Sequence record: ON190024.1
Direction: 5' to 3' (one strand)
DNA: 64,000 bases
Shown here: in pieces, positions 35,849 to 39,294 of the stretch
Layout of the letters: each line of letters begins with the position of its first letter
Numbering within the stretch: position 1 is the first letter of the stretch
The notes under the pieces: generated by a model
What the model was told of the DNA's origin: nothing
The model's database searches: none
What the model saw: only the letters and a program-made list of their open reading frames with translations
Program-made: the position numbers and the translations under genes

Positions 35849-36243
35849 ATTTCCAAACGTTCATGTACAAATGGAAAAGATTTTCATTTGATTTCAACAA
35901 TTACGCAGTTGAGAAGCAACGCGGGTTAGTCGGGGTTGTTGACTTTGTGATGAAGAAACACTTCACGCATCGAGTATATGATCGATTCTGTCCTGCTGAA
36001 TTCTCGATTCTACGTAGAATGTTGTATCATACTGTTAACAAACACTTAGGTGAAGTTCTGTTTTGGTACTACAGCACCGATAAGCGTGAGCTGGCTATCA
36101 AACGTGATGATATTTTCATCATCATGCAACGTGGCGTCACGGGTTGTATTTTGATCACTACGGTATATCGTAATGAACATAAGCAAAACTCTGATAAGTT
36201 CTTTTTGATTGACATAAGCAGAAAGCAAAATGAAGCAGATTAG
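35845..36243 (+). CDS. Hypothetical protein
   Basis: 132-aa coupled ORF. Confidence 0.65.
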   Translation: MNFQTFMYKWKRFSFDFNNYAVEKQRGLVGVVDFVMKKHFTHRVYDRFCPAEFSILRRMLYHTVNKHLGEVLFWYYSTDKRELAIKRDDIFIIMQRGVTGCILITTVYRNEHKQNSDKFFLIDISRKQNEAD

Positions 36244-36475
36244 ACTTGGTGACTTCATCGAAGTCACTGAAAGGCTTGACCAAGAGAGTTTTTTTGGTCA
36301 ATTAATTGATATTGCACCGTGTCTATGGGCACGTGGTGATTTTCTACGACTTGTCGATGACGCAGGTAATGAAGTTCAAGTGAACACTGTGAACATCGAC
36401 ATGATTAATGGCACTGTTGTGGGCGAAATCATTCGCAACGCCCATGGCTTTATGTATTGTGAGGAAAAGATTTGA
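36230..36475 (+). CDS. Hypothetical protein
   Basis: 81-aa coupled ORF. Confidence 0.6.
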   Translation: MKQIRLGDFIEVTERLDQESFFGQLIDIAPCLWARGDFLRLVDDAGNEVQVNTVNIDMINGTVVGEIIRNAHGFMYCEEKI

Positions 36476-36918
36476 GCAAAGCATATATTTTTGTGAATCG
36501 CTACTGTAAAGGGATTCAAGCTGGGATTCAAGGCGCACATGCGCTGCTACGACTTGCGCGTAAAGCAGAAAAGCCTATATTTGACAAGTGGTTAAACGAA
36601 GACGAAACAATTGTGATTCTGTCAGCGTCGGGTCACGACCATCTTGAAGAAATCGAAAAGACCATTCGTGAAATGAATGTTGTAGAAGACATCACGTTTT
36701 TTCAAGAAGAAGGTTTACATCACTCTCTAACGGGTGTAGCATTCATTGGTGACGACACGCTAATGAAAGTTCAAGCCGAAATGAAAGAATGGCGCGAACT
36801 TCGTAAAATTGGCGAAGGTCCGAAGCGTCGAGACTTCGACTCAGATATGTTCTACAAGTACGGTCGAACATATGAACTTGCAAAATACTTAGAGGGGTTT
36901 CATTCTCATCATGGATAA
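36472..36918 (+). CDS. Pth2-like (peptidyl-tRNA hydrolase II fold) protein
   Basis: GIQAGIQGAHA...KWL..ETIVIL...EEG...LTGVAF. Confidence 0.55.
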   Translation: MSKAYIFVNRYCKGIQAGIQGAHALLRLARKAEKPIFDKWLNEDETIVILSASGHDHLEEIEKTIREMNVVEDITFFQEEGLHHSLTGVAFIGDDTLMKVQAEMKEWRELRKIGEGPKRRDFDSDMFYKYGRTYELAKYLEGFHSHHG

Positions 36919-37141
36919 CTTAAATCTTAAATTGACTACTGCTTCTCGTTTTGAAGAATTGATGACGCGCCCTGGCGTCATCGTCAAGAACAGCTCTTCG
37001 GGTCCTGAATACATCACGACTGTTTACGATAAAGGCGAGTTAATTGCCGAACGTGTCCTGTACGTATCGCAAGCAGAGCATTTCGAGCTACAACTTCCTG
37101 AAGCAGTAAAAGCAGTTCGAAAGCCTAGTAAACTGCCGTAA
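36911..37141 (+). CDS. Hypothetical protein
   Basis: 76-aa coupled ORF. Confidence 0.6.
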   Translation: MDNLNLKLTTASRFEELMTRPGVIVKNSSSGPEYITTVYDKGELIAERVLYVSQAEHFELQLPEAVKAVRKPSKLP

Positions 37142-37177
37142 AAACTGTTTAACAACTAACTTTGTGAGTGTAATATT

Positions 37178-37378
37178 ATGAAATCTAAAGGTTTTACTCT
37201 GATCGAATTGATAGTCGTGATTGTGATTTTAGGTGTTTTGGCGTCAATCGGCGCAGGTGCATTGGGTTTAGGTCAAACTGCATCGTACACGACTCAATCG
37301 CAATCAGTGACATATGAAATTGACGGTCAGTTGATGCAATGTACTCCTGTGCAATCTGCATGGGACGATGATTTTTAA
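37178..37378 (+). CDS. Mini type IV pilin-like protein (class III signal peptide)
   Basis: MKSKG-FTLIELIVVIVILGVLASIGAG. Confidence 0.85.
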   Translation: MKSKGFTLIELIVVIVILGVLASIGAGALGLGQTASYTTQSQSVTYEIDGQLMQCTPVQSAWDDDF

Positions 37379-37387
37379 AGGTAATTG

Positions 37388-38287
37388 ATGAAAAACTACT
37401 TGCAACTATGTACTGAAATTCTCAACGAAGGTGATTTTCTTGAGAATCGAACAGGCACAAACACTGTTAGCGTGATTTCGCGTGAGCTTCGCTGGGATTT
37501 ATCGAAAGGTTTCCCGTTACTGACGACTAAGAAAATGGCAACTAAAGCCATCTTCGGTGAACTTCTATGGTTCTTGAGTGGTTCGGGGCTGATCAGCGAC
37601 TTGCGCAAATACACTGAGCTTTCAGACGAAGATTTCTGCATTTGGCAGCAAAATCTCGACGAGCTAAACGAGCGTGCAAAGAAAGCAGGTATTGTTCGAA
37701 ATGAAGACGATCTCGGTTATGTTTACGGTAAAGTATGGCGTAAGCGTCTATCTGTGACTGCTGACAAAGAAGTGACTGAGTTCGACCAAATTCATCAATT
37801 GCTGTGCGATATTGCAGCGGTTAAAGAAGACCCGACGCAAAGTGCGCAGCGTCGCATGATAGTTGAAGCATGGGACCCGTACTTCCACACGGAAAGCAAC
37901 TCAGTTGACGTAGCTCTACCGCCGTGTCACTATGGCTTTCAAGTGTTCGTGCGTAATGGTAAGATCAGTCTGAAGTGGAATCAGCGTTCAGTTGACACAT
38001 TCTTGGGTCTGCCGTTCAATATCGCATCGTATGCACTATTGGTTCACATTCTAGCACAGCTAACTGGCTTGAAAGTAGGTGAACTGATTTTCTCTGGTGG
38101 TGATGTTCACATTTATGAAGATCACATTGTGCAGGTACTGAAACAATTGCGACGTACTCCGCGTGAGCTACCGCAAATTCAACTGCCTGAATTTGATACG
38201 TTGTCACAATTGTTGACTAAACGTGCAAGCGACTTTGTTGTGTACGATTATGATCCGTACCCAGCACTAAAAGGTAAAATGTCATGA
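37388..38287 (+). CDS. td: Thymidylate synthase
   Basis: FPLLTTKK, ELLWFL, LPPCH, QRSVDTFLGLPFNIASY, HIYEDH; no intron. Confidence 0.96.
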   Translation: MKNYLQLCTEILNEGDFLENRTGTNTVSVISRELRWDLSKGFPLLTTKKMATKAIFGELLWFLSGSGLISDLRKYTELSDEDFCIWQQNLDELNERAKKAGIVRNEDDLGYVYGKVWRKRLSVTADKEVTEFDQIHQLLCDIAAVKEDPTQSAQRRMIVEAWDPYFHTESNSVDVALPPCHYGFQVFVRNGKISLKWNQRSVDTFLGLPFNIASYALLVHILAQLTGLKVGELIFSGGDVHIYEDHIVQVLKQLRRTPRELPQIQLPEFDTLSQLLTKRASDFVVYDYDPYPALKGKMS

Positions 38288-38478
38288 TCAGCAAAACCGA
38301 TTATTTTGAACTGAAAACAGGTACGCCAATCATCGTGATTGAGCGTATTGACACAATCGACGATGAGCTTCTAAAGCTCCCGTTCAGTAAAGTTGTTGCC
38401 GCAGATGATCCGAATATCAGCGAATCGTTAGCTGCCGGTAAAATTCACTATCTTTTTGACTTCGAAATAGGTGAGTAA
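38284..38478 (+). CDS. Hypothetical protein
   Basis: Coupled ORF. Confidence 0.6.
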   Translation: MISKTDYFELKTGTPIIVIERIDTIDDELLKLPFSKVVAADDPNISESLAAGKIHYLFDFEIGE

Positions 38479-38480
38479 AC

Positions 38481-38687
38481 ATGAACGTTGGTGAGTTCGT
38501 AGAAGGGTTGTTGACATTAATGGTATATGGTATCATTGCAGTTTGTCTTATTCTCGTACTGTCAGTTGGCGGGCTTATCTTCGGAACGTGTCTCATCATT
38601 TCGGGTCATACAATCGCTGGGTGGGTTGTTTCTGTTGTCTCAGCGATTATTTTTGCTTTCATATGCGCATTAATGAGGAATTTGTAA
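38481..38687 (+). CDS. Small membrane protein
   Basis: Two hydrophobic segments. Confidence 0.7.
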   Translation: MNVGEFVEGLLTLMVYGIIAVCLILVLSVGGLIFGTCLIISGHTIAGWVVSVVSAIIFAFICALMRNL

Positions 38688-38977
38688 TGTCTTTACACAT
38701 TTACGTAGAAGTTGACACCAACGACGGTGATTATGTCGGCGGTCTAACCGCAGCATCAAGTGAAGAAATCGAAAGATTTGAAACACTTGTTCATCTTTCG
38801 GGTGATAGTCTAGCGAGTTGGACAGAAGGCGAATGCCAAGATCGCCCGAATTCAGAAGTATACCCGCAGTTTAGCGAAAATGACATCGAGTTCATTTCCG
38901 ATAAAATGCCTTACTGTGAATACGGCTTTCACACCGTTGAAAAAATTAAAATCGTGGATGTGTTGAATACGCTATGA
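38687..38977 (+). CDS. Acidic hypothetical protein
   Basis: Start reassigned to MSLHIY after GAGG SD. Confidence 0.7.
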   Translation: MSLHIYVEVDTNDGDYVGGLTAASSEEIERFETLVHLSGDSLASWTEGECQDRPNSEVYPQFSENDIEFISDKMPYCEYGFHTVEKIKIVDVLNTL

Positions 38978-39294
38978 TCAATGAAATTCTAGCTTCAAGT
39001 AAGCGAATCGACAACGGTCGAACTGTTAAAGACGTTCATATGAGCGTTGTTGAAGAAGTAGGCGAACTAGCAACTGAAGTTCGCGTCAAGTACGGCACGT
39101 CGTACAAAAACGCTGACGTTGACGGCATTCTGGGTGAAGCGGTAGACGGGATTTTGTGTCTCGTTGATCTGATTTACGTTGATAACCCGAACATCACTGA
39201 AGCTGAAATCATGAACGTTGTTCGTAACAAGCTCGCCAAATGGGAGCGCAAAGAAAACGAACACAAAACAAAATCTGAACAAATGGTGAAATAA
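38974..39294 (+). CDS. MazG-like NTP pyrophosphohydrolase
   Basis: VVEEVGELA...GEAVDGIL. Confidence 0.75.
   Translation: MINEILASSKRIDNGRTVKDVHMSVVEEVGELATEVRVKYGTSYKNADVDGILGEAVDGILCLVDLIYVDNPNITEAEIMNVVRNKLAKWERKENEHKTKSEQMVK

What the first reader, a model, noticed from the sequence alone, without database searches (positions are those of the whole stretch)
37178..37378. Phage-encoded mini type IV pilin
Seen: a textbook class III signal peptide (KG/FTLIEL, Glu at +5) and hydrophobic helix, but only ~40 further residues and no globular pilin head; it is inserted just before td. Known: prepilin peptidases process such leaders for type IV pili and T2SS pseudopili. Inference: a dominant-negative decoy that jams pilus or T2SS assembly or titrates the peptidase, possibly excluding pilus-dependent competitor phages or altering attachment and secretion.
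Basis: partly seen in the sequence, partly recalled or inferred. Interest (0 to 1): 0.72.

Follow-up and report, generated by a model that had tools for sequence, protein, structure and literature searches.

The report
Headless pilin-like protein of a vibriophage
A T4-like Vibrio phage carries a conserved 66-residue gene that has the exact start of a bacterial pilus subunit but no head, so it probably plugs into the host's pilus or secretion machinery; the gene was already flagged in databases and its function has not been tested.

Summary
Window 37178-37378 (+) encodes a 66-aa protein with a class III (prepilin) signal peptide: leader MKSKG, then FTLIE with Glu at +5. It scores above the curated cut-offs of Pfam PF07963 and TIGR02532. 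The window is Vibrio phage PVA8, a KVP40-type phage, and the gene is the orthologue of KVP40.0030, annotated as pilin-like since 2003.

It is not a recent insertion. It sits directly upstream of td in all KVP40-like phages and in more distant T4-like marine phage contigs, and a relative lies in an N4-like phage contig. dN/dS is 0.06-0.23.

Two parts are strongly constrained and are joined by a variable linker:
- the signal peptide and hydrophobic helix, with K-G-F-T-L-x-E invariant;
- a C-terminal beta-hairpin motif ending in an invariant Cys-Thr.

There is no alpha1C helix and no globular head.

The closest bacterial N-terminus found is a Vibrio MshA-type pilin (21 of 26 residues identical). 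KVP40 has only this one such gene and no annotated prepilin peptidase.

My best reading, which is inferred and not shown, is a host-PilD-processed pilin mimic that enters type IV filament machines and disturbs them early in infection. Precedents are prophage FimU mimics and predicted truncated PilA in Pseudomonas phages (Cell Rep 2026). This is a new variant of a known kind, of moderate interest.

The parts
37142..37177 (+). 36-nt intergenic leader with a weak Shine-Dalgarno-like GAG (37166-37168). Nearly invariant across Schizotequatrovirus and nt-1.
   Evidence: Alignment A4. Promoter-like hexamers TTAACA-16-TAATAT end at 37176, too close to the ATG to serve this ORF.
37178..37378 (+). Mini-pilin gene (66 aa plus stop), orthologue of KVP40.0030 and PVA8_237.
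   Evidence: phrog_13280 E=5.7e-43. dN/dS 0.06-0.23.
37178..37192 (+). Leader peptide M1-K-S-K-G5. The predicted prepilin-peptidase cleavage site follows Gly5.
   Evidence: PF07963 and TIGR02532 matches. K4 and G5 are invariant. The leader is nearly identical to that of a Vibrio MshA-type pilin, MKTKG.
37193..37264 (+). Hydrophobic alpha1N-like segment F6-L29, with Phe at +1, Glu at +5 and Gly at +14 of the mature protein. Predicted transmembrane helix.
   Evidence: AF2 helix 8-28. Hydropathy. dN/dS 0.05-0.13. F6, T7, L8, E10 and G19 are invariant.
37265..37309 (+). Gly/Ser/Thr/Gln-rich variable linker (residues 30-44). Predicted periplasmic and disordered.
   Evidence: Lowest pLDDT at residues 31-38. 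Relaxed selection, dN/dS 0.15-0.7 over residues 30-43.
37310..37348 (+). Conserved C-terminal module (residues 45-57, TYEIDGQLMQCTP): predicted beta-hairpin with invariant G50, C55 and T56.
   Evidence: Alignments A1 and A3. AF2 strands 44-48 and 51-55. dN/dS 0-0.1 over residues 44-58.
37349..37375 (+). Variable tail ending in the acidic W-DDDF. Present in some clades and absent in VS1, nt-1, CZ01 and P0006.
37388..38287 (+). td (thymidylate synthase), starting 9 nt downstream of the mini-pilin stop. Probably co-transcribed.
   Evidence: PF00303 E=7e-81. Annotation.

Best explanation
The gene encodes a headless pilin mimic. Shown from the sequence: a type IVa/MSHA-style class III signal peptide, a roughly 24-residue hydrophobic alpha1N segment with Glu+5, a variable linker, and a small conserved hairpin with one Cys.

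Inferred steps:
1. It is transcribed with the early/middle nucleotide-metabolism genes (dut, dexA, td).
2. SRP/Sec inserts it into the inner membrane with the N-terminus inside and the C-terminus in the periplasm.
3. The host prepilin peptidase (PilD/VcpD) cleaves it after Gly5. In V. cholerae this enzyme is reported to function across the type IV pilus systems (TCP, ChiRP, MSHA) and the Eps T2SS.
4. The mature 61-residue protein then behaves as a subunit for host type IV filament machines, most likely MSHA-type pili and possibly the ChiRP pilus or the T2SS pseudopilus. It docks through the Phe1/Glu5 contact.
5. Because it lacks alpha1C and the head, it cannot supply the outer-layer contacts. 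It therefore stalls, weakens or remodels the filament.

The likely benefit is host-surface takeover during lytic infection: exclusion of pilus-dependent competitor phages, and/or release of the infected cell from MSHA-dependent attachment.
For: The class III signal peptide scores above curated cut-offs. The processing and docking residues K-G-F-T-L-x-E are invariant across clusters only 46-50% identical, while the other transmembrane positions vary. That argues for selection on peptidase recognition and Glu5-mediated docking, not on hydrophobicity alone; the role of Glu5 is from PMC10191384. Purifying selection acts on both modules. The gene is core and syntenic in KVP40-like phages from V. 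parahaemolyticus, alginolyticus, harveyi, natriegens, splendidus and crassostreae. It is also found in metagenomic T4-like contigs, and a relative sits between the RNAP II genes of an N4-like phage. The closest bacterial N-terminus found is a Vibrio MshA-type pilin, 21 of 26 identical including the leader. MshA is also the best Vibrio entry in the PDB search. The phage has one such gene and no annotated peptidase. VcpD/PilD is shared between pili and T2SS (PMC7096442). There is no T4-type late promoter (TATAAATA) on the + strand between 21128 and 51553, and the gene lies in a replication/nucleotide-metabolism cluster. Precedents: P-FimU (PMC12952977) and virus-encoded pilins that use host machinery (PMC12426801). 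In another phage lineage a mini-pilin lies next to an Imm-type superinfection-immunity gene.
Against: There is no experimental or omics evidence for expression, processing or any effect on pili; literature searches found none. Pro22, typical of T4a, MSHA and GspG subunits, is replaced by Gly in the KVP40 clade, though it is present in P0030 and P0033. The strongly conserved hairpin with a single Cys is not explained by a pure 'headless poison' model. KVP40 uses OmpK, so there is no self-exclusion benefit. The structure model has only moderate confidence (pLDDT about 66).
Confidence: 0.45

Rival explanations
1. Anchor-plus-effector. The prepilin signal serves mainly to place and orient a small periplasmic peptide, the conserved hairpin with Cys55, at the inner membrane. 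The hairpin is the active part, for example an Imm/Sp-like block to genome entry by superinfecting myophages or another envelope function. Pili and T2SS are not the target.
For: The hairpin is as constrained as the signal peptide (dN/dS 0-0.1) and keeps invariant G50, C55 and T56 even in the N4-like phage homologue. A different mini-pilin lies directly upstream of an Imm-family gene (PF14373; phrog_1039 E=5e-16) in L028 and L029. The gene sits among early-type genes.
Against: A plain signal-anchor would not need invariant Gly-1, Phe+1 and Glu+5. The protein has no similarity to Imm (no PF14373 hit) or to anything in the PDB. Adjacency to Imm was seen in only one other lineage.
Confidence: 0.2
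2. Benign incorporation or display. The mini-pilin is built into host pili as a minor subunit without blocking them. It changes the pilus surface by masking receptor sites, exposing the hairpin or cross-linking through Cys55, in the manner of P-FimU.
For: P-FimU is incorporated and keeps pili functional (PMC12952977), and the same paper offers this option for truncated P-PilA. Glu5 is retained, unlike tip-capping subunits (PMC10191384).
Against: There is no alpha1C or head to make lateral contacts. With roughly 37 residues beyond alpha1N the tail may not reach the filament surface (inference). Remodelling pili brings little benefit within one lytic cycle.
Confidence: 0.15
3. Peptidase sink. 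The abundant early protein saturates PilD/VcpD so that host prepilins and pseudopilins stay unprocessed.
For: A single peptidase serves several systems in Vibrio (PMC7096442). The leader is nearly identical to that of a host MshA-type pilin.
Against: A cleavable substrate turns over and does not sequester an enzyme (inference). Invariant Glu+5 and the conserved hairpin are unnecessary for this role.
Confidence: 0.05
4. Decaying fragment of a captured host pilin gene with no function.
For: Only the N-terminal quarter of a pilin is recognisable.
Against: dN/dS is 0.06-0.23. Length, frame and synteny are conserved over lineages whose td is 88% and mini-pilin 52% identical. The C-terminal motif is conserved. 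GC content equals that of the genome.
Confidence: 0.03

Closest known systems
Prophage-encoded FimU mimics (P-FimU) of F10-like Pseudomonas phages (Sztanko et al., Cell Rep 2026, PMC12952977)
   Same: A phage-encoded protein with a prepilin signal that relies on host type IV pilus machinery and serves phage-versus-phage competition.
   Different: P-FimU is a full-length, functional minor pilin expressed from prophages, and it replaces FimU at the pilus tip. The KVP40-type protein is headless (61 mature residues), comes from a virulent T4-like phage, and has not been tested.
Truncated PilA-like proteins (about 60 N-terminal residues) in six virulent Pseudomonas phages, noted bioinformatically in PMC12952977 (section 17)
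   Same: Same concept: a virulent phage, only the pilin N-terminal part, and the same two hypotheses (incorporate or inhibit).
   Different: The host genus and family differ. Whether those proteins share the hairpin/Cys motif could not be checked, because the paper's Table S3 is not held. The Vibrio family has only alpha1N plus a distinct conserved C-terminal module.
Geobacter PilA-N ('Geopilin domain 1'; PDB 2m7g, 6vk9, 7tgg, 9egp)
   Same: It is the best PDB sequence match (25.7 bits) and, for PDB 2m7g, has the same 61-residue length.
   Different: Geopilin keeps the long helical pilin 'stick' and pairs with a separate globular-head protein (PMC10191384). Here the predicted helix stops at about residue 28, and the downstream gene is td.
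Vibrio MshA-type major pilins (PDB 9lab; Vibrio sp. 99-70-13A1 pilin in L155)
   Same: 21 of 26 N-terminal residues are identical, including the leader MK(S/T)KG.
   Different: MshA-type pilins are 171-183 aa with a full alpha1 helix and a head. There is no similarity beyond residue 26.
Non-pilin phage inhibitors of type IV pili, such as Pf phage PfsE (PMC8764522, listed); Tip and Aqs1 are from my own memory and were not checked here
   Same: Small phage proteins that shut down pili to prevent superinfection.
   Different: They are not pilin-like. As I recall, they act on PilC or PilB rather than entering as subunits.
SNJ2 provirus pilins PilA1/PilA2 of haloarchaea (PMC12426801)
   Same: Virus-encoded pilins that use the host's secretion and assembly machinery.
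   Different: They are full pilins that build the dominant surface filaments, from a temperate archaeal virus.

Membership tests
Type 4 pilin (definition in Pelicic 2023, PMC10191384) | Class III signal peptide: a hydrophilic leader ending in Gly or Ala | tested here: met
   Leader MKSKG. PF07963 36.3 bits against 21.2; TIGR02532 36.6 bits against 16.3.
Type 4 pilin (definition in Pelicic 2023, PMC10191384) | 20-25 mainly hydrophobic residues after the cleavage site, usually with Glu at position 5 | tested here: met
   F6-L29, with E10 equal to Glu+5. Invariant in all orthologues.
Type 4 pilin (definition in Pelicic 2023, PMC10191384) | 'Lollipop' fold: an alpha1 helix of about 50 residues plus a globular head | tested here: not met
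   AF2 gives a helix at 8-28 only, then a linker and one hairpin. Only 37 residues follow alpha1N. No head-domain hit in Pfam, the PDB or Foldseek.
Type 4 pilin (definition in Pelicic 2023, PMC10191384) | Cleavage (and N-methylation) by a prepilin peptidase, and assembly into a filament | not testable with these tools
   Needs expression in Vibrio with and without pilD, plus pilus preparations.
T2SS major pseudopilin GspG (TIGR01710) | Whole-protein score above the equivalog cut-off | tested here: not met
   28.9 bits against a cut-off of 88.85, and only residues 4-29 match. The ValKK3 note 'PulG' therefore overstates the case.
Geobacter-type split pilin (PilA-N with PilA-C) | Long helical pilin 'stick' plus a separate globular-head protein (partner gene adjacent, from memory) | tested here: not met
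   Helix 8-28. The downstream gene is td.
Flp/Tad (type IVc) pilins | Flp-type processing motif G/xxxxEY, as I recall it | tested here: not met
   The sequence reads G/FTLIEL, which is T4a/MSHA/T2SS style, with no EY. No Flp family appears among the Pfam hits.
PHROG 13280 (phage family of unknown function) | Full-length profile match | tested here: met
   E=5.7e-43 over residues 1-66. The D484-type orthologue scores 2.7e-19 and the N4-like P0030 scores 8.6e-11.
T4 Imm superinfection-immunity family (PF14373) | Pfam match | tested here: not met
   No hit at E<=1. The only link is adjacency of another mini-pilin to an Imm-like gene.
Phage pilin mimics of the P-FimU type | Full-length minor-pilin fold able to replace the host subunit | tested here: not met
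   Headless. GspH- and FimU-type models match only residues 3-30.

The most novel reading that the evidence does not exclude
Headless 'mini-pilins' may be a widespread, uncharacterised host-takeover device of virulent marine phages (T4-like, N4-like and others). The phage borrows the host prepilin peptidase and a type IV filament machine either to shut down pili or secretion, or to carry a small phage peptide (the conserved hairpin with a reactive Cys) into the filament or periplasm. This would be done by phages that do not themselves use pili as receptors.
Probability: 0.3. Interest if true: 0.75.

Novelty: new variant of a known kind. Interest (0 to 1): 0.5.

Why it matters
If the protein really enters and disturbs host type IV filament machines, it would be a minimal natural inhibitor or probe of MSHA pili, competence pili or T2SS in Vibrio. 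It would also be an example of a virulent phage reshaping the cell surface against competitors that use a different receptor from its own.

Class III-signal mini-ORFs are frequent in the data. They make up 34 of 73 complete ORFs in a sample of viral contigs and 45 of the 152 proteins held after the library search. The mechanism could therefore apply well beyond this phage.

It is also relevant to phage therapy in aquaculture. KVP40-like phages are candidates there, and this gene has been flagged as a possible 'virulence' hit (ValKK3 paper, PMC13142089). A headless pilin is unlikely to act as an adhesin.

Tried and rejected
- I did not resend those sequences. I used only the window protein, proteins returned by searches, and loci from permitted tools (alignments A2 and A3).
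- **Word-index protein search.** It found only three clusters, all from phages.
- **Foldseek of the model against the PDB.** No hit better than E=3.4, which is meaningless for a 66-residue model of moderate confidence.
- **phmmer of the C-terminal 38 residues against the PDB.** No hits.
- **tblastn of the N4-like (P0030) and Imm-adjacent (P0053) mini-pilins against isolate phages.** No match, so no host can be named for them.
- **Shewanella phage Thanatos.** It has the closest Imm-like gene, but no mini-pilin next to it.
- **Terminator-like hairpin at 37345-37365 inside the ORF.** Not significant: z=-0.76, and the number of such sites equals the chance expectation.
- **Rfam over 36000-39000.** Nothing.
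- **Promoter-like site ending at 37176.** Rejected as this ORF's promoter because it would start transcription inside the ORF.
- **SPase I cleavage.** Small residues near A26-G27-A28 could in principle be a site, which would make the N-terminus an ordinary signal peptide. I considered this unlikely given the invariant G-F-T-L-x-E, the charged Glu in the hydrophobic region and its roughly 24-residue length.
- **Literature searches for expression or virion data on KVP40.0030.** Nothing found.
- **The 2003 KVP40 genome paper.** Not held.
- **Table S3 of PMC12952977.** Not held.

Full report
**What is there.** Window 37178-37378 (+) is an ATG-started ORF of 66 codons. Its product begins MKSKG|FTLIELIVVIVILGVLASIGAGAL. 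This matches the prokaryotic N-terminal methylation motif above curated thresholds: Pfam PF07963 at 36.3 bits against 21.2, and NCBIfam TIGR02532 at 36.6 bits against 16.3. All hits to named pilin or pseudopilin families (GspG, GspH, PpdD, PilA, ComG) cover only residues 2-30 and fall far below their cut-offs.

**Where the window comes from.** The window is 100% identical to Vibrio phage PVA8 and 98.8% identical to KVP40 (Schizotequatrovirus, Straboviridae). The ORF is PVA8_237, the orthologue of KVP40.0030. Its RefSeq note already says 'match to PF00114'. ValKK3 annotators wrote 'PulG' and 6E35.1a annotators wrote 'PilE'. A 2026 ValKK3 paper mentions a weak PilE hit while screening for virulence genes (PMC13142089).

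**The gene is real, old and core to this lineage.**
- tblastn finds it in 46 phage records, all from Vibrio phages and one copy per genome. Where I fetched the region, it lies in the same place: PTH2-like hydrolase, a 76-aa ORF, the mini-pilin, then td.
- A profile search of 1.84 billion representative proteins gave 15,591 hits to the N-terminal motif. Only a handful matched over the full length: P0005, P0006, P0009, P0033 and P0030.
- Three of these lie in metagenomic T4-like phage contigs, again directly upstream of td.
- P0030 lies between the two RNAP II subunit genes of an N4-like phage contig.
The best hits cover only the first 23-29 residues, and the few that span most of the query are only 31-38% identical.
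- Nei-Gojobori dN/dS between diverged orthologues is 0.06-0.23.
- Split by region, the signal peptide and helix (residues 1-29) give 0.05-0.13, the hairpin (44-58) gives 0-0.1, and the linker (30-43) gives 0.15-0.7.
- Between PVA8 and 6E35.1a, the protein is 52% identical while td is 88% and dexA 92%. It evolves fast overall but keeps two fixed modules.
- Residues invariant across all clusters are K4, G5, F6, T7, L8, E10, G19, G50, C55 and T56.
- GC content equals that of the genome. 'Inserted' is therefore the wrong word.

**Anatomy.** AlphaFold2 was run with 3 and with 8 aligned sequences. Both runs give a helix at 8-28, a low-confidence Gly/Ser/Thr-rich linker, a beta-hairpin at 44-48/51-55, and a tail. 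Mean pLDDT is about 66, so only the topology is usable.

By the definition in Pelicic 2023 (PMC10191384), the protein has the class III signal peptide of a type 4 pilin. It lacks the roughly 50-residue alpha1 helix and the globular head. It is also not a Geobacter-type PilA-N: the helix is short, and the gene downstream is td rather than a separate head protein (PMC10191384). It is not Flp-like either, because it has no EY motif.

The KVP40 clade has Gly where T4a, MSHA and GspG subunits have Pro22. P0030 and P0033 keep the Pro. The family has a single conserved Cys. Many other metagenomic mini-pilins have two.

**Context.**
- The gene lies in a long + strand block of replication and nucleotide-metabolism genes: primase, dut, dexA, td, topoisomerase.
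- It ends 9 nt before the td start codon.
- There is no T4-type late promoter (TATAAATA) on the + strand between 21128 and 51553.
- Early or middle expression is therefore inferred, not shown.
- A six-frame scan of the whole KVP40 genome finds no second class III motif.
- The RefSeq annotation lists no prepilin peptidase or pilus gene. Processing would need the host enzyme.
- In V. cholerae, PilD/VcpD is reported to function across the type IV pilus systems (TCP, ChiRP, MSHA) and the Eps T2SS (PMC7096442).
- KVP40 adsorbs to OmpK (PMC13609209).

**Which host system does it resemble?** The best bacterial N-terminal match in the truncated genome scan is a 183-aa pilin from Vibrio sp. 99-70-13A1. 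It is 21 of 26 identical, including the leader MKTKG. That pilin's own best PDB match is MshA at 68.9 bits. In the PDB search with the phage protein, MshA scores 23.3 bits, a PilA entry (PDB 9laa) 17.9 and GspG 17.2. This leans towards MSHA-type pili, but alpha1N is too conserved among type IV filament subunits for a firm call.

**Mechanism.** The most economical reading is a pilin mimic that the host peptidase processes. It would then be taken up by a host filament machine through the Phe1/Glu5 docking contact. Without alpha1C and a head, it cannot complete the subunit lattice, so it would stall or weaken the filament. The invariance of Glu+5 supports engagement with assembly rather than simple anchoring or peptidase titration. 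Glu5 is thought to neutralise charges in the filament core and to drive docking (PMC10191384).

The equally strong conservation of the hairpin and Cys is not explained by that model. It keeps alive a rival in which the class III signal merely delivers a periplasmic effector peptide. That rival gains a little from one observation: a different mini-pilin sits next to an Imm-type superinfection-immunity gene in another phage lineage. All functional steps are inferences.

**Relation to known work.**
- Phage-encoded pilins that exploit host machinery are established. Prophage FimU mimics block tip-binding phages (PMC12952977). Haloarchaeal provirus SNJ2 builds its own pili (PMC12426801).
- The FimU paper also notes, from BLAST only, roughly 60-residue truncated PilA genes in six virulent Pseudomonas phages.
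- PHROGs holds several unannotated families with the same motif, plus one labelled 'pilin'.
Of the 73 complete ORFs recovered, 34 are 100 aa or shorter. Some IMG/VR contigs may contain host DNA.
- Forty-five of the 152 proteins held after the library search are 90 aa or shorter.
- The idea is therefore not new, and the gene has been flagged for two decades.
- What is new here: the family's two-module architecture and its selection pattern, its spread to N4-like phages, its MshA-like leader, and its presence in a phage that does not use pili.

**Verdict.** This is a new variant of a known kind, and interest is moderate (0.5).

Noticed in passing
window 37142-37177: The 36-nt spacer before the mini-pilin ATG is almost invariant from KVP40-type phages to nt-1, although synonymous sites in the gene are saturated. 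It contains promoter-like hexamers (TTAACA-16-TAATAT) that end 1 nt before the ATG. It may be a promoter for td or a translational operator; RegA is encoded by the phage. More distant relatives have a 10-nt spacer instead.
   Followed up: partly
L021:5222-7099 (metagenomic T4-like contig); window 37388-38287: In L021, td is split into two pieces by an I-TevI-like GIY-YIG homing-endonuclease ORF, as in T4. The window's td is uninterrupted. ValKK3 carries a homing endonuclease within this 5-kb stretch.
   Followed up: no
L028:1794-2215 and L029:334-755: A different 78-aa, two-Cys mini-pilin (P0053) lies immediately upstream of an Imm-family superinfection-immunity gene (PF14373; phrog_1039 E=5e-16). 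In L027, from another sample, the same mini-pilin lies on a 30.6-kb contig that also encodes DHFR and PrkA.
   Followed up: partly
L020:2114-4891: A 73-aa homologue with the same C-terminal motif (DIDGNLIQCT) sits between the two RNA polymerase II subunit genes of an N4-like phage contig. This suggests horizontal spread of the family among unrelated virulent phages.
   Followed up: partly
window 36472-36918: An upstream 148-aa ORF has a weak PTH2 (peptidyl-tRNA hydrolase 2) match: PF01981, 26.2 bits against a cut-off of 23. It is annotated only as 'hydrolase' in KVP40.
   Followed up: no
window 38481-38687: A 68-aa ORF two genes downstream of td is a probable two-pass membrane protein (phrog_17378, function unknown). 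It is another small envelope protein in the same early-type block.
   Followed up: no
L038, L095, L094, L031, L100, L071 (IMG/VR contigs): There are further families of 64-95-aa class III-signal proteins with two Cys and C-termini such as ...QLCTYN. Small 'mini-pilins' appear common in viral contigs and are essentially unstudied.
   Followed up: partly
L023:43-2020: A 68-aa mini-pilin (P0087; ...VINGVVHICDDFGACEPKD) overlaps the end of a NAD kinase gene that follows NadA on short metagenomic contigs. Whether the origin is phage or bacterial is undetermined.
   Followed up: no
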